Shown: positions 10,672 through 59,941 of the stretch, in pieces
How the letters are laid out: every line of letters starts with the position of its first letter
How positions within the stretch are numbered: the stretch's first letter is position 1
Source: Paragordius varius
Lineage: Eukaryota; Animalia; Nematomorpha
Reading direction: 5' to 3'
Assembly: GCA_964247055.1 (NCBI GenBank)
Contig: OZ176054.1
Location: 8,122,001 to 8,186,000 of the forward strand
DNA: 64,000 nt
The notes under the pieces: model-generated
What the model saw: only the letters and a program-made list of their open reading frames with translations
Told to the model about the DNA's origin: nothing
Database searches by the model: none
Position numbers and translations under genes: made by a program

Positions 10672-13600
10672 TTATATTACATATTTAAAGTATGAGTGAT
10701 ACTGATTTATAAAAAAATTTATAATAATGTTTACCATATGATATATTTCCAAGAATTTAATTCGTTTCGATATACTTTGTTTGTAATTGAGGAAATATAA
10801 ATTTGCTATTAAAGGGAAGTAGATGGTTAGAAATTCCGAATCTTTATCAATTTTATCTTCAGAAATGATTCCAGTGTCTTGTCCAATAAATTCAATTAAA
10901 TTTTCAAAACATGCTAAGGTTTCTTCCACATTTGGTTTAGGTTCATTAATACTAAAAAATAATATATATATATATATATATATATAGAAATGGTAAAAAT
11001 ATTTAATTAAGTTGATAAAATTGATTTTATAGAAATTACCATCGTTTGCTAAAATCTTTTAATTCATTCACAATGATTTCTTGCAAAAAATCTTCTAAAG
11101 TTTGAAAGGTGGATTTTTCAATGGTGTTAATGCATTGATTTTTTATATTGTTATAAATTAATGTTAGATATGACGTAAAGAGATGTTCTTGAGTTACTGC
11201 TATTCTGTCATAAATCAATTTAATCACCAATGTTTTCAACTAAAAGATAAAAAAAATATAAAATTATAAAATAAACATAAAATCGTCAAAATTTTAAGGT
11301 TTTAAATGTTTGCACCAATAGATGTCTAACAGCAGTTATAATATATAAAATAAAGACACAATAACAAACGGTAAGGGTTAAAAATTTGGGGTTAATATAT
11401 GTAAATTGAAACATTTTAAATAAATATTTAAAAACCTTGTGTATATCTCCTTTTGTCAGATCGTATTCATGTGGATACTGATTTAAGTTGTCTGAAAAAT
11501 CATCCATTAATATTGAACTCAATAAAAATGTGTTATCATTTAAGCTATTTAAATGGTAAATCCTTTGTTTCAACTGCGTCAACAATTCCACATTTTCAGA
11601 AATAAACCTGATAAAAATTAATACATTTATAAAACAATAAATAAGTCAAAACTTCTAAAATGCTTCACGTTTAATATAACATTTACTTAAATTTTATTTT
11701 TTATAAAATACTTTAACTAACATAGCTTTATATTAATTCTAACCCCTCAACAAAAGCGAGAAACGATTCAGCACAACTCACCCTTGTAACCAATGTCAAA
11801 TACTCATAAGCCAAAAAACTGTATGAATTATTTCCCACATTAGATTTAGAATGTGCGAAGAATAAAGAATCAAATATATTGGTTATTGTGGTATTTATTG
11901 AACTTTTTTCATCTTGATTAGTCTTTGTGTGCATATTTGCCCCAATTATCAAATATTTTAAAGGTTTAAAGCAAACATTCAAAATTTTTAGCGCATCCTT
12001 TTCTGTTATGAGAGTCCGTTTGTCTCCATATTCTCTTTCCATTAAAAACCAAAATATGTGCGGTATCCAAATTTCATGTAATCTAAACAGCATATGAATG
12101 TCAAAGCTTTGACATAAACCGCATAATATATCGTATAATTTATCTGTTTGTGTTTCATTAAATATAGATTTCCTTGATTCCCACAGATTAATAACATTTA
12201 AAATAAAATTTTCAAAACTTTCATTGGCTAAACCTGTGGGATGGTCGATATTATCATTATTATTAATGGTGAATATATTTTCAAATTGATCCCAATCACC
12301 AATAAAAATGTCAAATAAAAACCACTGTGGAACAGATGCAGAATTCGGTTCTGTATAATTTATTCCACAAATGCTTAACAGCTCTTTTAATTCTTTCAAT
12401 ATTTTTTTATATTTTTCGATTTGACATAACGCTTTATCGTTTGGTATGATATCATTACCATTAGTTTTAACATTTAAAAGCTTTAATGTAAGTTGTACAA
12501 GTAAATCAATATGAAATATTTGATATGGATTTATTAGGGTTACGACTTTTTCCCATAAGTTTTGAGCAATTTGATAACAAGATACCATCTTTTCTATCAT
12601 TTGATTGCTTAATCCAGTAAAAAGTTCATGTTGACAACGGTTATATATCATGCTATGATATAAATGATTTAAGATAAAAATTTGGTAATGATTTTAATGA
12701 TAAATTTTTAACATATATATTCTAACTTGTAATTTTCCAACAACTCCAAGTCGTTCAAAGTTAATAAATGTGATATGTGATCTAGCAAGCTTATGTAATC
12801 GGTAACACCGTGACTTTTAGCCAACACAAGAGCTTTTTCAAATGTGTCAGAGTTCTTTGTAAGAACTAAGCCATGTAACGTGTCTGTCAAATAGTCTTTA
12901 TCGGTTTCCAATCTGCCCATATCAATATCTAGAACGTATTATCAAATATATAAAAGATTGTCTCATGTTTAAAAATTTTACGGTAAAATGTTTTTACTTT
13001 CCGTGATTGATGTTAGAATATTTTTGTTTTCCAAGTTTGAGAGTCGGTTAAATAGTTCTCTGATGTGAATAACATATTCTGGTTTCAATTTACTCAGATT
13101 TTGAGAAAAATTGGATAAATTTAGTTCCCTTATATTGAATTCATCGAAATGTTCAGATAAAAGGGATACTAATATTATTTCGACTAATATGGGTAAAGAT
13201 GGAGATTTACATCCAATCAGTGCCTTACTAACCATATTGTGGATTGTTTCTATATTTTTTTCAGGATTCTATTTTTAAGATAAAAAATTATTAGCCTCCC
13301 AAATACATAAGATAAAAAATTATAAAAAGCTTAAAACAATATAAAAATTATTAAAATTTAAATTAAAACTTGATTAAACGTCAATGTTCGGATGGTGGTT
13401 GTTAAAATACTTATGAATCTTAAAGTAAGTGGTGAGTGTGATCCCGTCAAATCGGTGTTACGTTTAACAAATAAAATTAATAATATCACAACATAATATT
13501 TTTGAGTAATCCGTTCCCCATTATTTGAATGTAATTCCATGTTCAAGGCATTATAATTTTGAGGTATCAAAGGATCTATATCCGAAAATTGAATGATAAC

Positions 13601-16600
13601 GTTATGCAATAGTTTCCAAAACAATTTCAATGATTTATATTCCATTGTGTTAATTACATTCACAATATCGTGTTCCAATGAAAAGGATAAGTGTAATAAA
13701 TCGCTATGCAAGATTTTAAAATGGTTTGAGGATAATATATCTGACATATTAATGTCTTGTAATTGCTTTTGCATTATTTCTAATTGTCTCTTTATCCAAT
13801 CATCAGATTCATCTATTAAAATCATCGATAAGTTTTTAGCCGGTCAAGAATAATAATTGGTTTGACAGCGTATAAATGCAATTTTTTACGGTCATAACCA
13901 GTATATTAACCCATAAAAGCAAATACATATTTTAGAAACAAATTAAAATATTTTGCCTATGCGGTACATCAAAATTAAATTAAAATTTGACTAATATTTT
14001 TTGCTGAAAAGCATTTGAAAACATTTTTAATTGGTAAATATTTTCAATTTTTGGCTGGTTACTTGGTAAGACCAAACACTATTCATTTATATTATTTCTA
14101 ATCTCATATATAACGCATCCCCCTCTTTAATGACCCAAAATTTAGGAAAAAATCCGGCCATCCGCATCATAACTCTTTTATGTTTAAAATATTTTTTTTT
14201 TCAAATTATATTCTAGAGATTAAATGTTATTCATTGTTTTATTATAATAGGGGAGCTATTGTAATGTGTAATAAATATATTACCGTGCGTTTGAGTATAA
14301 TGTGCTGACATATCCTGATTTGTTGATTCATCATGCAATTTCATAACTATTTCATTAATCCTTTCTTTCGGACAAAAAGAAAGTGCAAACGTCATCATAT
14401 CATAACCATGTGAGAATGGTAAATATTTTATACCAACATCGTAACATATTTGCCAAAATTGTTGGAATTCTCGCTCAAAAACCTCAATTAATGGCGATTC
14501 AATTTCACCCAATTTATCTTCATTATGGGTTCTGCTATTTAATTCAGATTTGGATTCATAAAATTCCTCAAAGGCTAGCTTTTTTATTCTTTGACATAAA
14601 TCGAAAGCCGCATCATATGAACGATTTTGTAAATAGTTTGAAGTGAGTGCATTTTGAGCAAGACATTGATATAATTTGCAATAACAAAGTGATAAAACGT
14701 TTTTTTCGAAAAACACTATCAAATCGGGTGTATAAATTTGTAAGTTAAGAGGTTTGAATCCATACTTTTGCAAATATGGATCTATACTATTTGCTTTAGA
14801 GTATGGAATTAATAGTTGAATTATATTTTCAAAAGCTGAAACAAAGGTATCACTGTACAAACTGGAAAAGATTGATTCGCCGTGGCTTAATACAAGTGCC
14901 AGGATATGGTTTTTGATCATATCTAAAATAATAATAAGAAACAACACCCCATTAAAAATTTATTTAAATAAGATTAATAATTAAAGATTTAGCAAAATGT
15001 ATATCATTTCGGATTAAATTAGAAAACTTGACAAAATTATTATTTATATTTTGACATGTAAAATAGAAAACAATCCATATACTTAAACTTAATACCATTG
15101 ATATCTTTCTTAGCAGACATTCTTATTTGCAAAGGAACGGGACTATAAACTTCAAGTTTCAATGGCTCTAATATTTGGGATCTTAAAATCGATATTGCCT
15201 TTAAGAATGCGTTAAGTTCCTTAAGTTTCACAATAATAGAGTCATCTATTTCTTGATTATTAATTACGGACTCTGAGAGCAGGAGGATCTTTTTGAAAGC
15301 TTGGAAAATTTGTCTAAATAAAAGAAAAGAGTTTTAAAATGAGAGTTTAACATAGGAAAATTGTAATTTTACGGAATATATATATATATTAAGCATATAC
15401 CAACCTTGCAATGTCAATGTTACATTGATAACAATCAGTGGCAGAATTAACGTACTCATCCATGATTTCAAAAATTAAACGGCGAATATCATGCAAAAAA
15501 TTCTGTTCAACACCTACAAAATATGATTAAATTATATATTTTGGCAAGCATAATAATTTAAATTTATTGGAGATTCCTGGTGTTTTAAATAAAGAAAATA
15601 TATGGGCTTTAACTGAATTGTCGATGAATCGTTTAATTTAAAGATAATTTACAAAAGCAAATAGTTATTGATTTTCATACTTTTAATTTCGGTCTTTTTT
15701 TCTAGTTTCAATTTAGTGTCTTGCCAATGTAAATCATAAAGTGTTTTAGCTATTTCGATGTTTGAATAGGTACTGTATGTTTCCACATAATCAATGTTGT
15801 CTATATCTTCATCGAGGGTTACCGTGTTAAGTAAATACTTTAATAATGATTGAATAATTATTGGAATCCCTTCATGCCTTTCGATAGGAAACAATATATC
15901 ATTAATGGCCATTAAATCTATGAAAATTTGCAAAGATAAATTTTTAAAACAAGAATAATGCTTAAAAATCGTCGTAATTGTAAAAGTTAATCATAAATGC
16001 ATGCTTGGAAGTGTTATATATTTTCGAACAATTGTGTTTTCAACAAATATTATAAAATATATAAATTTAAATTAAATGGCTTTTATCATTTTTATTTATA
16101 AAAAAAGTATATATTATTATATTAATTGTTAGTATACAATCATAAACCTTTATAAAGGATATTCCAATGTTCAAAAGTGTGAGCTAATGGGAAATTACGA
16201 GTTTTACGGCAACATTGAAGTATTATATTATTTAACAAAGTTGAATATTCACTCAAATCAGAGGGTTTTGTTTTCACAAAATTTTTGGCTACGTTTTTTT
16301 GTAGCTTTGATGAATCGGAATTATTCGTTACTAATAATTTATATATTGTAACTAATTTCAGATCTCGTATTTCATACTTTGATAATATGATTAATATTCT
16401 AAATAAATGAACAAATAAATAAATTTATAACATATATTGACAATTTGAGATATAAGTATTACTTTATACAATCCAATATTTTCGTTATTTTAGCCTCTAA
16501 ATCTTTTGCGACATTGGTAAGACTTTCATTTTTTGATAATTTAGTTTGCAACAACTTTAAAGTTTTGACAATTATTTGACAATTTTGATCACTTTGGGCG

Positions 16601-19600
16601 TGGAAGTTAAGGATGTCCAAAATATTAGAAATAAAAGTAATAATTATTTCGTCACTTTCACGTGCAGAGATGTCTTTTATTTGTTGTCCAGGTTCCAAAG
16701 TAAATAAGGAAATTACAGTAAGTTTTTGACTATTTTTTAGAGCAGGCATACTTGATGATGAATCGTTCGAACTCAATAAATATTGTAGCAGCTATTATAA
16801 ATTATTTTGTACCACAAATAAATTAATTCGTAACAAAACACATTCCAACCTTATTCATATAATTTATAAAAGTTATTTAGCTTTTAAATATATTATTACA
16901 TAATTTAGCATAACTTCATATATTGAAATCATGATAATTCAATATTTTTGTGTTAACTAAAAAATTAATATTTTATGTCGAATTTTGCCCATTAAAACTT
17001 TGATAAATAAGGATGTAGTATTATACGAGTTTTCAAAAATATGGTTCATATTTTAGTTCGCCATATTAAAATGAATAGACAATGTTAGCTAATATAAAAT
17101 ACTTTAACAAAATGAGTTTTTAAAACAATCAATTTAATATATTTTAAAAATTACTGTATATATTGCATCTATTCTCCCTTGCTCTGCTAACCAGGATAAA
17201 CAAGATATAATTAAGGATATATAGATTGGACATTTTACATCCACTTCCATTTTGATTAACATGATCTCATCAATTTTGAGCTTTATAAAATTTATGATTT
17301 TTGATGGATATTTATCAACTTTAATCGTATTTTGTGCATTATACAATTGGTGGTACAATTGACATAGGGGAATCATGAAACTTTTAAAGTTTTGAATTAT
17401 CTTTGAACAATTATAATCAACAACAGTGTCTGCTAATTGTGTCGATTCGCCATCAATGGTATGAGAGTGTCGTAATAACAAGGGAAACACATAATTTCGA
17501 CATATAACTTCTGGTTTATGCTTGAATAAATCTTTCAAAGTAACGAGATGATTCATATCGCCTATTAGACAAATCAAGTTTTTAATCTATTTGACAACTT
17601 TACCATTAATAATTATAGATCTCTAAGGTTTAGTTTAAGAATCATCAAAAGTGAGAAAATTAATTAATTGTTATCAAATAACGTCTTTTTAGTACTAAAA
17701 TTAAAAATTTAATATATCTTTTAGTAGAAAATTAATATGGTACCGAAGTCTGGTTGGCAAACATAAATAATGTGATCCAAAATCCTGAAAATAATAATGG
17801 GCAGTTGATAATCCTATTAAATATAATTATACTTTAAAGACATATATAAATAATAGGTTAATGCCGGTATTATGTCAACATTTCATAAAAACATTTAAAA
17901 AGTTTTAAAAATTAATACTTCCGAACATTAGAAGATTTATGGAAAAAAACTTAAAAAGCATTAACTTTGCCATTATTCTATCGACAATGAGCATAATTTT
18001 TTTATGGAATTTAAATACGTCTGTCCCTTTTTGTGGGTTATATATTTTTTTAATAATTTAGATTATATAGGGTTTCCGACACAAATGGTTTGCATGCCAA
18101 TTCGTATAAAACATAAACGCCAATAAATTTATATTTTAATTATATAAAAATGAGGATTGTAATAATAAGTTATAAAACAAAAAATATAAATTTAACATGT
18201 TTCGCCATGCTATAAAAAAATGATTATGTAAAATAATATACCTGAAAATCTAATGCTTCTTTACCATATGTCAGCAAATTCGAAACATTTTCTACCAAAT
18301 GGGTAACATTTTCAATAGCAAAAGCACGGTATAATAAGAAATTGTGCAGAATAGTATTGTCCTTTTCTCGAACATGAGTTAATCTAAAAGAAAAATATGT
18401 TACAAAATTTAAAATAAGCAACTAAAACTATCAATTATAATTATCTGTTTAATTTAATTTATTTAACACTAAAATTAATTTAATTTTGTAAAAGACTTTA
18501 TATTTCTATTTTTGTTGTCTAAAAAATATTTAATTAAAAATAATTTTTAAATGTAAAAGGTATAATATGGTGAAAAAAATCAAATATACAAAGTTATAAA
18601 AAATATATAAATTATTTGGACAAAATTAGCTTTTTTTTATAATATACCAATAATAAATATACCATTTCCCAGTCTAAATAAACGTTTTCCCAGTCAATCG
18701 AAACATCTTCCCAATCAATCGAAACGTTTTCCCAGTCAATCAAAACATTTTCCCAGTCAATCGAAACATTTTCCCAGTCAATAAAAACGGTTTTATTTTT
18801 AATGATAAATAATAAAACAAGAATATAAAAACAACTTTTAACCATTATTAGCGTACTATATGGAGATATTTTTAATTATAAACACAATTATTGAATGACA
18901 ATTTTTCCAAGTATATTCCTAATGACTTATTCTTTAAATGTTATATTTTTGGAATTTAAGATAATTTTTTTTATTTTATCGATGGTTCGCATTAATATAT
19001 GCGGCTAACTTAAAAAATCTATAGTTACGGAGGAATTAATAAAATTTATAAAAATATACCATTTTTGTCTCAAAGGTCATTTAACACTTTATATTGGATC
19101 TTAAACATAAATTTTACGCTAATTTTATAATATCTAACATTTCGTTGGGGGCCTAAGGCGGCCTTCCGAGTATCTTTGTGCGGCCCGCAAAAAATTTGGA
19201 AAACCATATGCAAAAATATGCCCACAAAATCTTATCAAATATTTCTTACGCAATTATGAATGATTCTATTAAATTGGTAATGAATTAAAAAAAAATTGTT
19301 ATATTGTGTTTGTATTTTATAGTCTTATAAAATTATGTGAATGCCCATATGTATTTCGAATGGGGAACCGTGTGCTTATTGAGTTAAAAATGCGGCCCGC
19401 GAAGGCATTTAGTTGGACACCCTTGTTTTAGTCAAATATCTTTTTTATTTATTAAATATTTTTAAATCAAAAACATTTTTATCAAAAAAATTTTCGTTAA
19501 GATATTTTTTCCGACAGTATTTTTATCGACAAACCGGACAAATTTAAAAACTATTGTGAAGCGTTCCGCAAATATTAATGCGAACTATCAATAAAATAAA

Positions 19601-22600
19601 AAAATATTATCTTAACTCAAATTCCAAAAATATAACATTTAAAGAATAAATCATCAATGATTGTGCACTGGAATATACTTAAAATTGTCATTCAATAATA
19701 GTGTTTTTATAAAAAATAATATCCTAATATTACGCTAATAATGGTTAAAAGTTGTTTTTATATTCTTGTTTTATTATTTATCATTAAAAATAAAACCGTT
19801 TTTATTGACTGGGAAAACGTTTTTATTGATTGGGAAAATGTTTTTATTGACTGGGAAAATGTTTCGATTGACTGGGAAAACGTTTCGATTGACTGGGAAA
19901 ACGTTTCGATTGACTGGGAAAATGTTTCGATTGACTGGGAAAATGTTTTGATTGACTGGGAAAACGTTTCGATTGATTGGGAAGATGTTTCGATTGACTG
20001 GGAAAACGTTTATTTAGACTGGGAAATGGTATATAATATATAACCCGATAATGTTAAAATACTAGAGAATAATAAATTAATACTCATCATTAACTTAAAT
20101 TCCGATAAATCAATATTTAATCCATCTTGGTCATGATGTGATATACTACCAAATACATTGGTATTTTGATCAAACAGGGCTTCAGGTTTATTGATACTTT
20201 CTTCATACCCCATTAAAGTGTCAAAATCTATATCAAGGCTTTCCGCAAAATCCAACGTTTTCTCCTAAAAAGAATTGTAATATCAATATGGAATTGGTAA
20301 ATACTACTAGTATTTTTATGAAAAAAGTATTTCATATTAAAACAAAAAAAATAAATGTTAAACCAATGTTTTAATCTTATTGTGTGTCTGATCCAAAACC
20401 AAGTAGTTTAATATTAGTATGAATATCGAGGTGTCAAAATTCGGTGGGAGATACCATAAGAGACACAGTATATATGGCCTGATAGATTCTAAAAAAATAG
20501 ATATAATATTTATATAATCATTATTTTGATAATTTTGTTCATGCAAACTGTTTAAAATATAATACAAAATCAAATTAATTTATTAGATATATCAAATGGT
20601 TACTTTTATATTGCATAGAATATGCTTGATATGCTAGTTTAAGTGCAACACAAATCAATTCGAATTTTTCAAAATTATCCATTGTTTCCGCCAATCCTTT
20701 TAACACCAACCATATATTAGTATGTCGAAAAAATTGCCAAAATTCTGGGTTAAATTCTTTGTTCGAAAGCGCAATCATGCCCTAACAAAATATAAGTTAC
20801 TTTTTCAATAATATTATTTCAACTCAAACCTTGTTTAATACGATTCGATTAAAAATATATACTTTATACATATCAAGCCGAAACAATTGGGATTGAAATT
20901 GCGCTACGTATTGCTTATCCACCTCCCTGCTCCTATTCAATAAAAAAATATTGTTAATTAATTGTAAAGATAGAATTGTTTAATTAACATTAATAAATAT
21001 ACCTTTTCACAAGTTTAAAACCAAATTTAAGGGTATAGATTGAATCTTCTAAAGTAGAACTTAGAGATTCCAGTGATTGCTGAATGACCCATGACTTATT
21101 TCCAATCTTTTTCTGTTAAATGTGCCAAATTTTAGAAATAAATTAAAAAACGTTGGATTTAATTTATTTATAATTTATAGTAAAAAAATTATGGAAAGGG
21201 TTTCATGAAACAGGACAGACATATATTTGTTAGTTAATTTTTCTATCCGCAATTCGTTTATATTGTAAAAAGTTTAATTGTTTCGTTTTATTTGTATCTA
21301 TTATCAATATATTTTTTATTTTGTAAATATGTTTTTTCCCATATTTCAAGACAATTATCCATTCTAGTGCTTACATACGAAGGCTGCTGCAAAAAAAAAT
21401 CGAAAAAAACTTCAGAATCAATCCAAATTCAATCATATAGAAAATGTAAATCCATTGTACCGAATACCTGATCACAATCCCTTAACAAAGTAATAGCAAT
21501 CTCTGATCACAATGGGCAGGCCAGTGGAAACAGGATAAGACATTCATATTATTAATACTATAAAAAATTATTCAATAAAATTACCAGCTGAATAGGGGAT
21601 ACCCTAAACACCATGGTACAGTACAATAACAAAAGATCTCAAAAGGCCTAATTTTAATATAGAAAGAGCTAAATCACGAAACAATTGGAGATATACCCTG
21701 AGTGTGTGGCCATTTTAGAGCGAATACCTTTACAGATGTTGATGATGATATCCGTTTGCGAACAAATATTAGATTTTACAAAAAGTAAAATAAACTTTAT
21801 GTTAGTTGACAGTTTTCATTTACTTAAAATATTACAGCTTAGCTTAACATGCATTTCATAAATCTCCATTTTTTTATTGGAAAATATTGGGTTAAACACA
21901 TGGATGGATTTTCGAATTTACTAAAATGCCCAAATTATAAAGTAAATAGAATAAAATTCGGAATTAAAAACAATTTGGTAATGTAAAACTTAATATGTTA
22001 AAAATAAATCTGGTTTTGCGAAAATTCTATGTATCCTTATTGCTTATTTTCAAATATTTGATTGAATGAAATTTTAGTATAAACTACCAAATAATTATCG
22101 CAATCCGTTTTAGTTTTAAGTGAATGTGTCCATTGATCCATATATACGTGATCGGTTTCAAGGGCATATTTTCCAGCAAAAATTAATGCTTCATCGTATA
22201 ATTTGGCTTTAATCTATTGGTAATAAAGTATAAATAAATTTTATGCAAAAAAATATAATTTCGCGTTTGTTAAAACATTAGTATATATATATATATATAA
22301 TTATTGTCATTTATTTAATACTACCTTCCTTTCATATAATTTTTGAGGTGTAGTACTTTCTATGGCATATAATTTTTGATAAACATTGCATGGTCTTTAA
22401 AAATATATAAATATAAATATAAAATTAAATAACAAAATCAAATTTCATGTATATAAATAAAAATTTACATTAAATCTGGCTCGACATATCCCATTAATTG
22501 TAAAAATATCATGGGCACTTGCATAAATGTATTTGAATATGCTTTAAATATATATTTGATGGTATCTTGCAAGCTAACAAATGGATTATTGGGTGTTTGC

Positions 22601-25581
22601 TGGAAATCGTTGTACGATATCTTTTTGCTATTAAGGGGTTTCCTAGTTTCCTACATTAGGAAAATAAATTATAAAGATAGCTACAATAAACCCCTGGAAA
22701 AATACTTGATTTACTATCCGCACCATGACCCTTTTTCAAAAAATGTGTAAAATAAAATTTTTGGTTAACATTTAATTACCAAAAAAATTATTTAAATAAA
22801 ATTAATAATATACTACACTATTTAAAAAATAAGTTAAAAAATGTTTAATTTATCTTTTTATTATTTGGATCATTATAAGGGTTACTATTACCCAAAAAAA
22901 ACAAGTTTGTGTAAAGGTAATTTGAAAGATTAAAACTTAAAAAAGATAGTCTTATAAAAGTGCATGATGACCAGCACGAGCTAATTAGTTAATAGGCGCT
23001 TTTTATTCAAAAAACTCATTGTGAGAGGGGATTGGGTCGTTTATACAGAGATAAATCAGGATTTTAAACTATTACAAAACTAAGCAATTTTACCTCCAAG
23101 ACCCAAAGGAGATCATCTTTAACGTAACATAAATTGGATATGTTTGAGCCCGTAAATTCATCATTCATAAAATAAATTATGCTAGCGTCAGACGTATCCT
23201 CATTTGTCGTATGGGCATCGGAGTGTGGGTCAAATTTTGGGTTATTATGAACAGGAAAAGGACTTCTCCCAAGAAATGTAACGTTATAATTATTATCAGT
23301 TTCAATATAAGTATATTTGTTTAGTGGATCAATCTCTTGACCGGGATCTTGAATAGTTAAACGACCGTTACTCCACAGCAAGGCAATCATATTTTCTGTG
23401 CGATTATGCTCTTTTCCGGTTTTGTCACCAACCAATGTTTCTTGACATCGATACCAATCCATGTCAATGGCTAAAAAATGTTGTTTTTGTGAAGTGGACA
23501 CCTAGATTTATTGATTTTAATTAATTAAAATGTAAAAGACAGTTTATAATTATGACCAAATAATAGAATGTGAAAAATTAAAAAAAACAGTTTTTGTGAT
23601 GCGGAAACCTTGATTGTTAATTATAGTTTAGTTTTCGCTTTCAGTATAAAGTTAAATAAAATGGAAATAAAATTAACGAAAATCCGCATTCAATGCGTTT
23701 TAAAAAACTTTATATTCATTATGTTTTAACTAACAAACATTTAATATCTTTATTTGACTTTATTTAACATTTATATTAAATACTTTTCACAATTTGCGAA
23801 AAAATACACCCCTTTTTTAAAGTTAAATTACTTTTTCCTCATAACGATAACGTCTTAAGGAGGTTAACGTGAACGATGGTAACTTAAAAATTAATATCAT
23901 ATTTATTAGGTCCTGTCCATTAATCATAGTTCCAGACAAATAATTCTTGCTATCTTGAGCCATATTATTAACCATTTTATGTAGGAGGGAAAAAAGACTA
24001 ATTGCTTTTGTAGTTATACTTTGAGTAGTATCAAAAACTACCAAGATAGCTAAATAGTTTTCACATGGAGACAATCGCATTTTGACAAATTTTACGAACA
24101 TATTACTCTCAATCTGATCCAAATCGTCCAAAGAATGCTGTGAAAAGGGTTGAAATATGGATTCTAAATTATTTGTATCTAAAATAATATTGAGGTAATA
24201 TTTACTTAAATCTGTTTTAATTGGATCATGCTTAACTATCCGATATAGGGTTAAAATTGGACTTTGATGTTTTGTTGGCACTTTAACCAAATTATTGATT
24301 GGTGTTTCTAAAATAGGAGGTTTTAATGCTAACTAATATATTTTTATGTTACTTGTAACGATGAGTATAGAATGATGTTTAGAAGTTATGACATCCATTA
24401 AACTAGTACCAAAACTAAAACAACCCAACACAAAAAATTTGGAAGTGTCAAAGCTAAAATAATTATGTAATAAACTCGTAATCTAGATTTATTATCGTGC
24501 CATCTAAGTAAAATAGGAAAAACTCTTTGGTGCTATAATGGTTAAAAAAATTAAACTTTTTTGAATCATTTATCATTGAGATCAATGGAATTTTCAAGAT
24601 TTGAGGGACATATGTCTATTTTTATATAATTTAACACTCCATTACCTTTTGGGTTAATTTGATATCCCAGAGCGATTTGGAATTAGAATGTCTTAAAAAA
24701 TATTCAAGGTGTTAAGCCGACTTTAAAATATGCTTTCTTTAGCCTTTTAGGCGAATTATGCAAAAAAAATTTAAAAAATGTAAAAAAATAATCATCTCAA
24801 ACTTTTCTGGCGCCATTTTTTCCTATAAATTTTTTAATCGCCAACGCAACAGGCAAACAAATGTATATTATGGTTAGAAAATGTAAATAATTAATTTTAA
24901 AAAGCTTTCAGGCTACATTTTACCTGCAAAAACTTATTGATTTTAATATCAGCTGTTCGTTTCAATCGTGTTTACGAGCTGTTCAAATTCCATTTTCTAG
25001 AAGTCAAAAACTACAAAAAATTTACTTTTTACATCTATTAAAACAATGTTTGATAATTAAATTTTAACCAGAATAACTTTGAAAACAGTAGTTATTAACA
25101 AAATTGAGCTCTTGGATATAAAACTACCCCAATATCTAAACTAAGACGAAAAAATGAAAAGGCAATGAAGGCTAAATACCGATAGAATAATTGATGCAAT
25201 CTTTTCTTGGGTATTTAGTTTATAAATAATTAGTTCTTCCCCGTTTGAAATATATAAAAAATTTCCTTTAGACAATATAAAGCATGGAGACACGCCTAAT
25301 TTTATATACAATTTACCTTGAATCGAATAACATATTTTAGATTCATTCCTAAAATTAACTGTCCTATACCTGATTTGTAAGACGTCATATAAAAAAATTG
25401 CAATAAAACTAAATATAATATAAATTTACTCATTTAATTTATAGCATTTACATAAATTCAAAGAACTGTTTTTCCCACCAAATCTAATCAATGAATTAAT
25501 TGTCTAATATTAAACTGAATATACTGTTTTATAGGTCCATTCGTCCAGCAATCTTTTTTCAAATAAATTTAGGACTGACAT
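10672..25581 (-). CDS. NBAS: Neuroblastoma-amplified sequence / Sec39-like ER tethering protein (multi-exon; internal exon boundaries only partly resolved)
   Basis: The reconstructed 5' end MSVLNLFEKRLLDEW..LQIR..CFSF..KMRLSPCENYLA and the internal ESTTPQKLYERK|IKAKLYDEALIFAGKYALETDHVYMDQW match the NBAS pattern (STTPEELYQRKI..EYEEAL..YGLDTDLVYQRQW). A run of minus-strand ORFs continues to the stop at 10672. Confidence 0.8.
18657..20034. mobile_element. Foldback-type element with long terminal inverted arms containing a 21-bp minisatellite, in an NBAS intron
   Basis: Arms ~18657-19010 and ~19560-20034 are inverted copies. The unit attgactgggaaaacgtttcg occurs 6 times in the left arm and 11 times in the right. 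Termini atataccatttccc / gggaaatggtatat. Confidence 0.8.
19130..19425. mobile_element. Degraded hAT-like MITE inside the foldback spacer
   Basis: It shares gcggcccgc, aaaaattgttatattgtgtttg and the gttggacaccc terminus with 33947-34225. Confidence 0.55.
24635..25171. mobile_element. piggyBac-like MITE (TTAA target) in an NBAS intron
   Basis: ttaa|cactccattacctttt at the left and a degenerate inverted end aaaaggcaatgaagg|ctaa at the right. Homologous to 26440-26886, 32270-32801 and 52400-53232. Confidence 0.65.
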
Positions 25582-26439
25582 GGTTTATGCACATGTATAT
25601 CGTATGATTTATGCTGTGCGAAGCAAATCTTATGTTATACAACCTAGATTTTATTAATTAGTTACTATGTCTATATACAACACATTAATTTCAGTCCTTT
25701 AATACAAATTTGGGTATTTAAATACTTCAGGATTGTTTAAAATTAAAAAATTCAAAAAATATGGGATAAATAATCATTACAAAAGTATGTAATATAATAA
25801 ACCGAAATATAATAAATAATTTATGCAAAAATACTTGATTTTACTTATTTAGAGGCAAAACCAAAAAGGTAAAATTTAGCCAAAATATGTGTGTTGAGCT
25901 AAATTTCTGTTTATATCAATGTTAAATGTGATTTTATTAAAAAAAACTTAATTTTAACCTTAAAATCAAATAAGCATGATATTTTGCAAAAATGTTTTAA
26001 AATAAAAATGACTTCCATAGTGGTTTGATACGTTTCCAAACTAATTGCATATTTTGGTTTATTTAAATAATTTTCATTAGGATAGAAGCAGATATTTAAA
26101 TTGGAACCGTTTTTTTAGTAGTTTTTTTGAAAATATCATTTTTAGATATTTTCAGGGTATAATAAATACCCCAATTTAAAGTGTTTACAGCTTATCGATG
26201 AATAATTGCTATGAAAATTGAATCCCTAAATTTATTTAGGTTTAATCATAAATTTAATGTATTGTTTATCATCTAAATATACACGCATAAAATGTGTGGA
26301 TATAAAAAATCTGATGATACACAATGTCTATAAAATATATCCTGATGAAATTTATATATTTATATATATATATATATACATTCTGATGGGAAAATGTATC
26401 AGGATTATCACGGTGTTAGTTTTCGACGAGTGATATAAT

Positions 26440-32131: not shown

Positions 32132-49966
<17,835 letters not shown>

Positions 49967-50989
49967 ATTTGCTTGATTTTTTTAGAAATTTTAGAGCATT
50001 ATTTGGCTGAAAAACTTTCCATCATATGGAAATATGGAACAATAGTTTATAATGTGTATTATTTTTGATTTTTGAATAAAAGGAATATTACGAATTAATC
50101 TTTTATTATGGATTTCTTTTAAATTTATGGCATGAAATGCCCAGTATATCAAAATAACTTGTTTATTTGAATACATTATTTATCGATATATTTGACACTT
50201 GTCGGTCCCCAGGTTTGAATTAAAATAACTATCTACTAAATTAGTACACGGTTTCATTTTAATTAGAAATATCTCAAAATGTACATTATAAATTGGCTAC
50301 AAATTGAATTTCAAATTTTACAAGTACCTTGGTTTAAATTCTGTGGCCAATTAAGCAGTAGTATTAAAAAATGGTAACTATAGAAAAAACGATATTTGAC
50401 TTCGGAGCATCTGTGCACAAAATCGGAGATAAAATAATATTCTGAGAAAAAATATTTATTTTGGTAAATAAATGTATCAGAAGTCTTTTTGGGCCTTTGG
50501 TTTTGGGGCTTACTGATAAAAGGATCAAAAATTATTTTTTAACTATGTCTTTACTGTAAACATTATCCACAAAAAAACTACTTGAATATATATACTGATA
50601 GGAATGTATATCAAATTTTTAAACTTTTGTGGCAGCTCCATATCAGAAAATGGCCAAATTTGCACGCAATTTTAAATATATTTATAGCAAGGGGCGTTCT
50701 AAAAAATATCATAAATATATAATAAACTACATATAAAGAGAGCAATATTATTATAAAACTTAAATTTTTAGATGTGTGCTCCTAAAGTCTTAAATTTATT
50801 TGCTCTCCTAAAATGGGCTTGTCTAAAATAAACGCACAAATGTAAGATTGCGCGATAATTATAAATATATGCTAAATTTTGATATCAACCAAAATTATTT
50901 TTCGAATGCATATTGTCAATAATTCAAATAATCAAAATTTTGCTGAAGCGCTTTTAGATATCGTAAAAACACTTTTTCTATGTAATTAA

Positions 50990-57000: not shown

Positions 57001-59128
57001 TATAATAATAATAACAATATTAATATAAAATTTATTATGCTATGTGAAAAGATTGGTTTTTGATTGTAACTAAATATACGTTAAGTAAATGGCTAAAGAT
57101 GAAAAAATATGGTAAAAATTTAGAAACACCCATTAAATCATATTAATGCAGTTGCTCGCTAAATTTTTTAAATCAAATGCAAATATTTTTAAGGTTGTGT
57201 TTCGACCTAAAAAAAACAATAAATAATCATGATGAAGATAGAATTATGATTATTAGATAGTTGTTTTTGTATGAAAAGATACAGAGGTAGTAGAAGAATT
57301 ACATTTTTGATATAGCAAAAAGCATAGGTAATCGCAAAAAATTATGCGATAAGAAAAGGGCAAGTGTACAATAGATCGGCCAATCCTTTTTATTCAGGTT
57401 CCTATGTAGTCCTAAAGGTAAACTCTGGAAGGAAAACCTTTCTGGGACCAGAATATGTTGGCGTGGATGTGGACACATGATGAGAGTAAGCCAAAAATAT
57501 ATTTGGACAAGAATATGTTTAACTTGGGTTAATCAATAGATACGGCGTTAATATCATAAATTAATTTAACAAATATTGCCAGTTAACAACAACATACGAC
57601 TAATTGAATGTCATAATACGGTACATTCTCGATTTATGATGACTGCCGCAACAATATTAATAAATTTAATTTTAGTTTCAGCAAGTTATAAACTTGAAAC
57701 GAAACCGTGATACAGATTTACTTCATATAATATTCCCAGAAAGAAAATATGGGTGTTTGTCGAGCGTCTAGCTTTGTGGTTATTTACATATATCTCCATA
57801 TTTTCACATAAATTAGTTTTTATTTTGGTTGTTTATACAATATTCCTGTTTTTGGCTCATTTTCACTGCCAGGAATACATGTTATAAAACTTTTACCTAT
57901 TGCCAATTTCGGCTCCATAGATTTTGTTAAGATGTGTGATTTCAACGTGTATTATCGAATATTAAACGAGGTTCTTTTAATCTGAAGCCAATCAGTCTGA
58001 AATTAGTAATATTCTTGATATTATTCAAATATTGGGTTTAATTTATATACTAAAGGTTTTTCTATTTTATTTGGTTTTGAGTATAATGGTGGGGTGCTAA
58101 ATTAGAGTTTTTTTTTTTCAAAAAATTAATTTTCCGAATCGGTGCAAGTGCATAATATATAAAGATTTGAAACCACATCCAGGTTCTATTTTTTAGTTAT
58201 TTATCTGTGGGCCATATGTGTTATAAATGGTAAAACTTGATAAAAAATTGGCTACTATTTAGAAACGAGATAAAAAATGTTTTTTTATTTTTTTAAAGAA
58301 AAGGGTTATTGTTTCAGTAGGTGGCATAATACAGATATTGGGAATTGGCATGTGAGCGTTTTTTGCTTAAAATCCCGATTCAAATTGGGGTAACTAGTGG
58401 CCCCGAATTAAATATACACGATATTTTGCAAAAATGTTGCAAAATAAAAATAGCGTCAAAGTACAATACAGTACTTTTTTTCAAAAATTTTATTTAGATA
58501 TTTTGGCTTATAATTTTTATTAAGATAGAAGCTTGATTATTTACAGTTTCTATGATTATTTTAAAAATATCAAGTTAAATATAGTCTGGGTATTTAGATA
58601 TCCCTATTTAGATTAAGCGCTAAAATTATATCTAACTATATTAATAGAGAAGGTTCTAACATGTCTTGCTGGCCAAATTTGTAATTTGTAATATACGCAT
58701 TTTTTAGATGAATCTTTATTATTTCGTGTATTATTGATTTTCAAAGTGAAAACTTTTGTATTTTATACAGACCTGGGCATATAGTTACTACATATTAAAT
58801 CGAAGGACTGGAAGGAATGTATCGTATCCAGTTCTTTTTTTGCTTTTTAACCAAAATAATTTAATTGGGTAGAAATTTTGCATAAATATAAGAACATAAA
58901 TTTTTATTTATGTTGCCCAAGTTTGGGTTTATACTATCAACCTTTTTCTTTAAAAACATTTTATTTATATTATTTAAGATTTGGTACCAGTTATTTTATT
59001 ATCTTTTGTTACTAATTGGTTTTTTGGATAAAAATATGATGTTGTTTATAAATAATACACTGATTTTGTAAATAATTGTTTGTATCTTCAACCTTTCTCA
59101 TACATTGATTTATCCTGATGAAAACAAT

Positions 59129-59941
59129 ATGAGTGCCCCAGAGACCGAAAATTCATCCGAGCAACATGTTGATTCTGCTTCATATATTATATCTAACCTC
59201 GTTCTACCATTAGTTATTAAGCCAGCAGTTAATAAAATGAGTCAAGATTGCGAAATCAAGGCTTTTGAAAAATTGATTCAAGCATTAAATGATTCATTCG
59301 CAAATATGGAGAATGCTAAACCCGGATTTACATATGATTTCGTTAAAATTTTATTACGAAATGCAGTAATATCTACAACAGGAAATGATGATTCCTCCAT
59401 GTCATTAGATACAACTAATTCTTTGGTTGATAATGAACTACAAGAAAGTATGTTGCGACTATCATCATCGACCAGTATAACAGATGATGCTAAGTATGCC
59501 AATATATACAGAATGATGCCAGCACCCCTAATAGAATTGGATGTCAAATCATTAGAACTTAAACACATCCTCAGCAAAATTCCGGATCAGATTAAAGATA
59601 GAAAAATATTTTTAGAAACCATCAAGGAAATAGCAGGTTCAATTAAACACCTGCTTGATGCCGTTAACGACGTATATTCAAATATAAACACATCTAATGA
59701 AATCGTAATTGAATCTAAAAAAATTATTTTAACAGACGAATACAAACAAAGGATTCAAACTTTGATAGAACAGAAAAAACGTGATTTCGTCCGTTATTCC
59801 AAAAAATTTAGTAATACTTTGAAGGAATATTTTAGGGAGGGTGATGTCTATGCTGTTTATAGAAGCGCTAATTGTCTCGTATACCAAGCCGAATTAATAT
59901 CGGGCACGCTCAAAGAAAATATATTGCAACACACCACCTAA
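59129..59941 (+). CDS. PDCD10: Programmed cell death protein 10 / CCM3, single exon, 270 aa
   Basis: LKHILSKIPDQIKDRKIFLETIKEIAGSIKHLLDAVNDV and EQKKRDFVRYSKKFSNTLKEYFREG..SANCLVYQ match the PDCD10 FAT-homology domain. The ATG is taken at 59129. Confidence 0.93.
   Translation: MSAPETENSSEQHVDSASYIISNLVLPLVIKPAVNKMSQDCEIKAFEKLIQALNDSFANMENAKPGFTYDFVKILLRNAVISTTGNDDSSMSLDTTNSLVDNELQESMLRLSSSTSITDDAKYANIYRMMPAPLIELDVKSLELKHILSKIPDQIKDRKIFLETIKEIAGSIKHLLDAVNDVYSNINTSNEIVIESKKIILTDEYKQRIQTLIEQKKRDFVRYSKKFSNTLKEYFREGDVYAVYRSANCLVYQAELISGTLKENILQHTT

What the first reader, a model, noticed from the sequence alone, without database searches (positions are those of the whole stretch)
24454..25524. 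NBAS 5' end is chopped by a run of 21-24 nt GT-AG introns
Seen (minus strand): introns 25504-25524, 25409-25429, 25349-25369 and 25296-25316 (all 21 nt), 24533-24556 (24 nt) and 24454-24475 (22 nt) separate exons of 32-116 nt whose phases all add up into one NBAS-like ORF from the ATG at 25581. Three of them are obligatory (in-frame stop or frameshift if retained). Known: introns this short are typical of Paramecium, chlorarachniophyte nucleomorphs and dicyemids, and are far below the usual minimum in most animals. Inference: this animal has a spliceosome adapted to micro-introns, and standard gene predictors would mis-annotate it.
Basis: partly seen in the sequence, partly recalled or inferred. 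Interest (0 to 1): 0.85.

Follow-up and report, generated by a model that had tools for sequence, protein, structure and literature searches.

The report
Tiny introns at one gene's start
The first 1.25 kb of a large gene in this hairworm-like genome reads as protein only if GT-AG segments of 21-27 bases are cut out, which fits the tiny-intron class this scan keeps finding here. The exact cuts, three of the six claimed introns and the NBAS label stay unproven, because I found no RNA and no relatives.

Summary
They are 21, 21, 21, 21, 24 and 22 nt, all GT-AG, and removing them gives one stop-free ORF from ATG 25581. Three are obligatory: two carry in-frame stops and one shifts the frame. The other three have lengths divisible by three and no stop, so the ORF is open with or without them. 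A seventh obligatory micro-intron (24329-24352) is needed further on.

Support is moderate. A chance thread of this kind occurs in 1-4% of shuffled controls. GTW..TTAG segments are about 10 times denser here than in long ORFs. All four differences from a related DNA run that fall in the exon model are synonymous. The DRP1 gene in the same window has 23- and 25-nt introns pinned by contiguous homology to human DRP1.

Hundreds of ORF-compatible models with only 32-49-nt introns also exist. No RNA contig covered the locus. No homologue of this gene was found, so "NBAS" is untested beyond a weak propeller-solenoid junction motif. The organism is a hairworm relative (PDCD10 is 55% identical to Gordionus).

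The scan has already reported this micro-intron class many times on other DNA of this genome. This is one more case, less well supported than those.

The parts
25525..25581 (-). Exon 1 (57 nt), starting at ATG 25581. An in-frame TAA lies at 25585-25587 upstream.
   Evidence: The difference at 25534 in run X3 is a synonymous ACC>ACT change in this frame.
25504..25524 (-). Micro-intron N1, 21 nt, GTATAT..TTAG, phase 0. Obligatory, because it holds an in-frame TAA if retained.
   Evidence: An ORF-compatible alternative is 25484-25515 (32 nt).
25430..25503 (-). Exon 2 (74 nt).
25409..25429 (-). Micro-intron N2, 21 nt, GTAAAT..TTAG, phase 2. Obligatory, because retention reads GAG TAA.
   Evidence: An alternative donor at 25451 gives a 43-nt intron with the same acceptor.
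25370..25408 (-). Exon 3 (39 nt). It is the start of the 94-codon open stretch 25144-25425, which has no ATG in frame.
25349..25369 (-). Candidate micro-intron N3, 21 nt, GTATAG..TTAG. Its length is divisible by three and it has no stop, so it is optional.
   Evidence: It is supported only by the motif enrichment.
25317..25348 (-). Exon 4 (32 nt).
25296..25316 (-). Candidate micro-intron N4, 21 nt, GTAAAT..TTAG. Its length is divisible by three and it has no stop, so it is optional.
25180..25295 (-). Exon 5 (116 nt).
24616..25179 (-). 564-nt intron, GTATTT..ATAG, phase 0. Most of it is a high-copy repeat.
Evidence: It is the shortest frame-keeping join between the two open stretches. X3 depth is 240-770 across 24589-25149 against about 4 elsewhere.
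24557..24615 (-). Exon 6 (59 nt).
24533..24556 (-). Candidate micro-intron N5, 24 nt, GTTTAA..ATAG. Its length is divisible by three and it has no stop, so it is optional. It is the least supported of the six.
   Evidence: It falls outside the GTW..TTAG class.
24476..24532 (-). Exon 7 (57 nt).
24454..24475 (-). Micro-intron N6, 22 nt, GTTTAT..TTAG. Obligatory, because retention shifts the frame and gives a stop 5 codons on.
24353..24453 (-). Exon 8 (101 nt).
24329..24352 (-). It removes the single TAG (24333-24335) between two same-frame open stretches of 49 and 169 codons. The alternative is 24333-24359 (27 nt).
23832..24328 (-). Exon 9 (497 nt), followed by a 330-nt intron (23502-23831) and exon 10 starting at 23501.
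   Evidence: X3 differences at 23838, 23844 and 23499 are all synonymous third positions. Substitutions at 23554 and 23565 and a 1-nt deletion at 23813 fall in the intron.
22088..22213 (-). Exon encoding the propeller-to-solenoid junction motif. It is the only piece with any family signal.
   Evidence: PF24520 ARM_KNTC1_1st at E=0.0064, 16.8 bits against a cut-off of 27.3. Atlas neighbours are the Nup160, ELP1, KNTC1 and Sec39 junction families.
10675..22039 (-). Rest of the gene: a chain of open stretches up to 321 codons, all-helical where modelled. Candidate joins between adjacent open stretches are 48-101 nt or several hundred nt.

Best explanation
This is the 5' end of a roughly 15-kb minus-strand gene (25581 down to about 10675). 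The gene encodes a large protein with a strand-rich N-terminal part and a long helical body, of the NBAS/KNTC1 kind, in the genome of a horsehair-worm relative. Its first 1.25 kb is cut by a run of ordinary U2-type GT-AG introns that are only 21-27 nt long. The run also holds one 564-nt intron that is mostly a repeat. From the ninth intron onward the introns are of normal size. Shown here: the sequence facts; that an ATG can reach the ATG-less 94-codon open stretch only by splicing; that two further cuts are needed before the 169-codon exon; and that homology-pinned micro-introns of 23 and 25 nt exist in the same window. Inferred: that the cuts are exactly those listed. The four obligatory ones (N1, N2, N6, N7) are likely, N3 and N4 are plausible, and N5 is doubtful. 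Also inferred: that they are removed by intron-definition splicing from a short GTW donor and a TTAG acceptor, and that the protein is NBAS.
For: Exact GT-AG segments and a stop-free 1464-nt CDS. The open stretch 25144-25425 has no ATG in frame. ATG 25581 has an in-frame stop two codons upstream. With at most 2 introns of 18-30 nt, N1+N2 is the only thread from any ATG within 400 nt upstream. Nulls are 1.3-3.7% and 5/3454. GTW..TTAG segments of 20-27 nt occur at 7.2 per kb in 25581-24329, against 0.72 per kb in long ORFs and 1.5 per kb window-wide. In 25581-25180 the only four are the four claimed. The two densest 400-nt windows for the relaxed motif on this strand are 24201-24600 and 25151-25550. 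Micro-intron GC is 17% against 29% for the exons. All 4 differences from run X3 that fall in the exon model are synonymous third positions, and all X3 indels fall outside it. The DRP1 control shows 23-nt and 25-nt introns between residues that are contiguous in human DRP1, followed by a 3.3-kb intron. Later joins in this gene are 48 nt or longer.
Against: No RNA: three possible RNA runs of the same species label laid no contig on 20101-25700. No homologue of any piece was found, so no junction is pinned by homology. There are 5254 ORF-compatible threads from ATG 25581 with up to five introns of 18-150 nt. Models with only 32-49-nt introns also exist. Codon-usage scores do not separate these exons from background. 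N3, N4 and N5 are divisible by three and stop-free, which is the class shown to be annotation artefacts in Tetrahymena (PMC5014332). Four introns of exactly 21 nt are shorter than the homology-pinned 23-25 nt ones in this window.
Confidence: 0.62

Rival explanations
1. The gene and its start are real, but the exon-intron structure differs. Fewer and somewhat longer introns (about 32-49 nt) are used, and N3, N4 and N5 are simply coding sequence. Examples are 25484-25515 plus 25409-25451, and 24475-24523 plus 24308-24352.
For: Among models with at most 2 introns, 654 for the first segment have all introns of 30 nt or more. Among models with at most 3 introns, 233 for the second segment do, and these keep 222-327 coding nt. 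N3-N5 leave the ORF open whether kept or removed. Stop-free ultra-short introns with lengths divisible by three were artefacts in Tetrahymena (PMC5014332).
Against: Lengths of 43-49 nt fall between the two size classes seen in this gene and in DRP1. The excess of GTW..TTAG 20-27-nt segments exactly at the claimed sites would be left unexplained.
Confidence: 0.22
2. The thread from ATG 25581 is a chance construction in AT-rich DNA. The true first coding exon lies elsewhere, either further upstream and joined by a normal intron, or at a downstream ATG such as 24576. Exons 1-2, or 1-5, are then not coding.
For: Chance threads are not rare: 5.5-14.5% of shuffled targets reach some ATG over 20 or more codons. 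About two open stretches of 94 codons are expected by chance in a window of this composition (my estimate from the stop frequency). Codon scores are uninformative. There is no homology to the N-terminus.
Against: The observed 43-codon extension has a null of 1.3-3.7%. The only X3 difference in exon 1 is synonymous. N6 and N7 are still needed downstream. The layout copies that of DRP1.
Confidence: 0.12
3. The stops and the frameshift are real lesions or assembly errors, so this is a decaying or mis-assembled gene end rather than one with introns.
For: Nothing specific. It is only the generic alternative for any interrupted ORF.
Against: Every interruption is bracketed by GT..AG at 21-27 nt. The related run X3 shows only synonymous differences in the exon model and no indels there. 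The downstream 14 kb keeps long open exons.
Confidence: 0.03

Closest known systems
Micro-introns of DRP1 in the same window (49842-49864, 49675-49699, 49522-49546)
   Same: GT-AG boundaries, 23-25 nt, AT-rich, GTW donor and TTAG/TAAG acceptor. They cluster at the 5' end of the gene and are followed by introns of hundreds to thousands of nt.
   Different: Those are pinned by residue-contiguous homology to human DRP1 and their lengths are not divisible by three. The ones here have no homology support. Six of the seven have lengths divisible by three, and four are 21 nt.
Dicyemid (Dicyema japonicum) short introns
   Same: An animal parasite with spliceosomal introns far below the usual animal minimum.
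   Different: In Dicyema short introns are the genome-wide norm (mean 38 bp, PMC6736024) in a reduced 67.5-Mb genome. Here tiny introns sit only at gene starts, beside kilobase introns and many repeats.
Micro-intron modes of parasitic flatworms (Gyrodactylus, Echinococcus)
   Same: A bimodal intron length distribution with a 'microintron' mode, and a bias of short against long introns by ordinal position in the gene (PMC4040987).
   Different: The flatworm short mode is about 32-37 bp. Here it is 21-27 nt, and the lineage is an ecdysozoan.
Paramecium and other ciliate ultra-short introns
   Same: A length of about 25 nt. In-frame stops in introns divisible by three make retention detectable (PMC5014332). 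N1, N2 and N7 fit that rule.
   Different: These are unicellular eukaryotes in which all introns are short. N3-N5 would break the rule that such introns carry a stop.
NBAS / KNTC1 (ROD) family of beta-propeller plus alpha-solenoid tethering proteins
   Same: Size of the coding chain (roughly 2000 codons, my estimate). A strand-rich N-terminal third and an all-helical rest. A junction motif that weakly matches PF24520 and clusters with KNTC1/Sec39 proteins.
   Different: No hit to Nbas_N, Sec39 or Rod_C. No phmmer hit among 1.8 billion representatives for the 321-aa C-terminal piece. My recollection that the motif matches human NBAS residue for residue is memory only and was not tested.

Membership tests
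Spliceosomal micro-introns (under 30 nt) | Canonical GT..AG boundaries at a length under 30 nt | tested here: met
   All six claimed segments and the added 24329-24352 meet this.
Spliceosomal micro-introns (under 30 nt) | Removal is required to restore the reading frame | tested here: inconclusive
   Met for N1, N2, N6 and N7. Not required for N3, N4 and N5. Other boundary choices also restore the frame.
Spliceosomal micro-introns (under 30 nt) | Flanking exons are contiguous in homologous proteins | tested here: inconclusive
   No homologue was found for this gene. Met for the DRP1 control in the same window.
Spliceosomal micro-introns (under 30 nt) | Spliced form seen in RNA | tested here: inconclusive
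   No listed run is on record as RNA. Three possible RNA runs laid 0 contigs on 20101-25700.
NBAS (neuroblastoma-amplified sequence) | Nbas_N beta-propeller domain (PF15492) | tested here: not met
   No Pfam hit at E<=1 for the N-terminal pieces 23064-23501, 23823-24290 and 25141-25311.
NBAS (neuroblastoma-amplified sequence) | Sec39 domain (PF08314) | tested here: not met
   No hit for the 18 pieces scanned across the gene. Pieces were scanned singly, so a divergent domain split over exons could be missed.
NBAS (neuroblastoma-amplified sequence) | Orthology to annotated NBAS proteins | not testable with these tools
Single exons found nothing.
KNTC1 / ROD | Rod_C (PF10493) and KNTC1 ARM domains above threshold | tested here: not met
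   Only PF24520 at 16.8 bits against a cut-off of 27.3 on a 35-residue stretch, and no Rod_C. No KNTC1 chain appeared among PDB hits at E<=10.
Nematomorpha (organism) | Closest available orthologue is from a hairworm | tested here: met
   PDCD10 (59129-59938) has 55% identity, E=6.6e-75, to Gordionus sp. m RMFG-2023. The next hits are about 40%, from arthropods. Window GC of 24-35% fits the 26.9% reported for Gordionus (10.1101/2023.06.26.546503).

The most novel reading that the evidence does not exclude
Hairworms have a distinct promoter-proximal class of spliceosomal introns reaching down to 21 nt, used in runs of up to eight per gene beside kilobase introns. Standard pipelines set a minimum intron length near or above this size. 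By my recollection, which I did not check, STAR counts gaps under 21 nt as deletions and AUGUSTUS has a default minimum near 39 nt. If so, many 5' exons are mis-annotated, and that would contribute to the low BUSCO scores and the 'rampant gene loss' reported for Nematomorpha.
Probability: 0.3. Interest if true: 0.8.

Novelty: new member of a known kind. Interest (0 to 1): 0.45.

Why it matters
If confirmed by RNA, 21-nt introns would sit at the lower limit known for any animal. A run of eight at one gene's start, one of them later inflated by a transposon, would be a compact substrate for asking how a spliceosome places the 5' site, branch point and 3' site within about 20 nt. It also bears on annotation quality. 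The only hairworm genome paper I could read (Gordionus, annotated with BRAKER and STAR) never mentions introns and reports 71.6% BUSCO completeness. By itself this locus adds little, because the class has already been noted many times by this scan and this example lacks both homology and RNA support.

Tried and rejected
RNA evidence:
- The look-up of sequencing runs listed no holder on record as RNA.
- Read laying on 20101-25700 with three possible RNA runs of the same species label laid nothing. Only the DNA run X3 was informative.

Homologues:
- phmmer of the 321-aa piece against 1.84 billion representatives gave 0 hits.
- The word-indexed search of the 169-aa and 145-aa N-terminal exons gave 0 hits.
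- PDB phmmer of three pieces gave only noise.
- The Gordionus PDCD10 protein is not on record in the contig index, so no related locus could be fetched.

Family assignment:
- Pfam on 18 exon-sized pieces gave one sub-threshold hit.
- Atlas features were uninformative for the 242-aa piece, and the tool was busy for the N-terminal piece.

Structure:
- Single-sequence AlphaFold models had pLDDT of 44 and 39. That is too poor for fold search, so I ran none.

Coding potential:
- A codon log-odds score trained on 1800 codons from the window did not separate the short exons from stop-free background.

Other:
- A search for terminal inverted repeats of the repeat inside the 564-nt intron gave only weak arms. 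I did not pursue it.
- I did not hand in the spliced protein as typed letters, so it was never searched as a whole.
Full report
WHAT IS THERE. On the minus strand the six claimed segments are exactly as described. Segments 25504-25524, 25409-25429, 25349-25369 and 25296-25316 are each 21 nt. Segment 24533-24556 is 24 nt and 24454-24475 is 22 nt. All begin GT and end AG, and five of the six end TTAG. The exons between them are 57, 74, 39, 32, 116, 59 and 57 nt. ATG 25581 is preceded two codons upstream by an in-frame TAA. Reaching the first large exon needs three further introns: the 564-nt intron 24616-25179, one more small intron, and a 330-nt intron. With all of these removed, the first 1464 nt read without a stop.

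Retaining N1 or N2 gives a stop within 2-5 codons. Retaining the 22-nt N6 shifts the frame and gives a stop 5 codons later. The other three (N3, N4, N5) have lengths divisible by three and no in-frame stop. The frame is open whether they are removed or not, so 'the phases add up' says nothing for them.

Two open stretches of 49 and 169 codons in the same frame are separated by a single TAG at 24333-24335. That TAG is bracketed by a 24-nt GTAACA..TTAG segment (24329-24352) or a 27-nt alternative.

IS IT MORE THAN CHANCE. The window is 24-35% GC. A bare GT..AG of a given length occurs about once per 600 nt per strand, so such segments are cheap. Four controls bear on this.

(a) Only 5 of 3454 ATGs in shuffled sequence can be threaded over 402 nt with at most four 20-24-nt removals. 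In the real window the 45 ATGs that can be threaded are mostly in regions with long ORFs.

(b) The 94-codon open stretch 25144-25425 has no ATG in frame, so a start must be spliced on. The chance that an arbitrary target can be threaded to an upstream ATG over at least 43 codons with at most two introns is 1.3% for introns of 20-24 nt and 3.7% for 18-30 nt.

(c) Segments of the form GTW..TTAG, 20-27 nt long, occur at 7.2 per kb in 25581-24329. The rate is 0.72 per kb inside long ORFs and 1.5 per kb in the whole window. In 25581-25180 there are exactly four, and they are the four claimed. Under a relaxed motif the two densest 400-nt windows on this strand are 24201-24600 and 25151-25550.

(d) The micro-introns are 17% GC against 29% for the exons.

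Together these give moderate support, not proof. The ORF constraint alone leaves 5254 possible threads from ATG 25581 with up to five introns of 18-150 nt. Among models with at most 2 introns, 654 for the first segment use only introns of 30 nt or more. Among models with at most 3 introns, 233 for the second segment do. The best of these are 25484-25515 (32 nt) with 25409-25451 (43 nt), and 24475-24523 (49 nt) with 24308-24352 (45 nt). A codon-usage score did not help to choose between models.

INDEPENDENT EVIDENCE. RNA: no listed sequencing run is on record as RNA. Three possible RNA runs carrying the same species label laid no contig on 20101-25700. Splicing is therefore neither shown nor refuted.

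DNA of a close relative or other strain: run X3 holds 39% of the sampled words. Its contigs differ from the window at many sites in this stretch. The four differences that fall inside the exon model (25534 in exon 1, 23838 and 23844 at the end of exon 9, 23499 at the start of exon 10) are all synonymous third-position changes. Every X3 indel lies outside the exon model. This supports the reading frame of exon 1 with a single site. It also supports the 330-nt intron boundaries. X3 barely covers 25337-25523, so it says nothing on N2-N4.

Positive control in the same window: the DRP1 gene on the minus strand starts at about 49956. Its exon pieces align to human DRP1 up to residue 54 and from residue 55 of chain 8skn_A, across a 23-nt GT-AG segment inside the P-loop. 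They also align up to residue 123 and from residue 124 of chain 4h1u_A, across a 25-nt segment. A third 25-nt segment lies between these two, and a 3.3-kb intron follows. Micro-introns of this kind, clustered at a gene's start, are therefore established by homology 24 kb away.

The gene under study has the same layout. All eight introns in its first 1.25 kb are 21-27 nt, apart from one that is mostly a high-copy repeat (X3 depth 240-770 against about 4). The next joins are 330 and 272 nt. In the 3' half the candidate joins between adjacent open stretches are 48-101 nt.

WHAT GENE, WHAT ORGANISM. The chain of open stretches runs from 25581 to about 10675. No piece has a significant family hit. 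The exception is a 58-residue exon (22040-22213) that matches PF24520, the KNTC1 first ARM domain, at E=0.0064. That is 16.8 bits, below the 27.3-bit cut-off. Its feature neighbours are the propeller-to-solenoid junctions of Nup160, ELP1, KNTC1 and Sec39-domain proteins. One neighbouring cluster carries both PF24520 and Sec39, so the hit does not separate NBAS from KNTC1.

All homology searches for this gene came back empty, and the single-sequence structure models were too poor to use. From memory, the motif and the spacing to a following 'NYL' match human NBAS. That is a lead, not a test. I rate NBAS about 55%, KNTC1 about 15%, and another protein of this architecture about 30%.

The organism is a hairworm relative. 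The intronless PDCD10 ORF at 59129-59938 is 55% identical (E=6.6e-75) to a protein of Gordionus sp. m RMFG-2023, and the next hits are about 40% identical, from arthropods. At 55% identity it is a different species from that one.

COMPARISON WITH WHAT IS KNOWN. Introns this short are the norm in Paramecium, at about 25 bp (PMC5014332). They are close to the dicyemid condition, where the mean is 38 bp (PMC6736024). Parasitic flatworms have a 'microintron' mode at about 32-37 bp, with a bias by ordinal position in the gene (PMC4040987).

In ciliates, short introns with lengths divisible by three are depleted and enriched in in-frame stops. Stop-free ultra-short ones in Tetrahymena turned out to be annotation artefacts (PMC5014332). 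By that yardstick N1, N2 and N7 look normal, and N3, N4 and N5 deserve suspicion. The motif enrichment favours N3 and N4 all the same.

I found no paper reporting micro-introns in Nematomorpha. The Gordionus genome preprint does not contain the word 'intron'. Cunha et al. 2023 is not in the searchable library, so I could not check it.

STANDING WITHIN THE SCAN. Earlier notes on this same genome report the same class many times on other DNA. They include the 5'-end bias (s1-248847), the DRP1 case (s1-261312) and the reading of the 564-nt intron as a 23-nt intron plus a MITE (s1-261448). I tested the DRP1 claim and the 5'-end bias for this window, and both hold. I checked only the repeat nature of the 564-nt intron.

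VERDICT. The sequence observation is correct. The reading as micro-introns is probably right for the four obligatory cuts, with the exact boundaries unproven. It is plausible for N3 and N4 and doubtful for N5. The NBAS label and the 'adapted spliceosome' are untested. This is one more example of a phenomenon already noted, and a weaker one than the homology-pinned cases.

Noticed in passing
window 49435-49981 (minus): DRP1 begins with three micro-introns (23, 25 and 25 nt), the first inside the P-loop. Two are pinned by residue-contiguous alignment to human DRP1. A 3.3-kb intron follows.
   Followed up: yes
window 59129-59938 (plus): An apparently intronless PDCD10/CCM3 gene. The best hit is Gordionus sp. 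m RMFG-2023 at 55% identity, which identifies the genome as that of a hairworm relative. The 400 nt upstream (58551-58950) is one of the densest spots for micro-intron-like GTW..TAG segments on the plus strand, so there may be introns in the 5' UTR.
   Followed up: partly
window 24589-25149: The inside of the 564-nt intron is a high-copy repeat. Depth is 240-770 in DNA run X3 against about 4 in the flanks, and many X3 contigs join within it. The intron ends that remain outside the repeat are about 30 and 25 nt.
   Followed up: partly
window 18612-18875 (minus) and 19741-20043 (plus): Two inverted copies of an ORF with the same 27-residue N-terminus, followed by a tandem 8-residue repeat (IDWENVS-like, 24-nt unit). 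They lie inside an intron of the large gene and are probably the two arms of an inserted element.
   Followed up: no
window 20101-25700, run X3 (organism B): A second, differently labelled organism holds 39% of the sampled words of this 10-kb stretch. It has identical exons and diverged introns (for example 12 substitutions and 2 indels in 21653-21755). It is either a sister species or a mislabelled or host-derived sample.
   Followed up: partly
window 41098-41480: A locally GC-rich patch with overlapping open stretches on both strands, unlike the rest of the window. I did not examine it.
   Followed up: no
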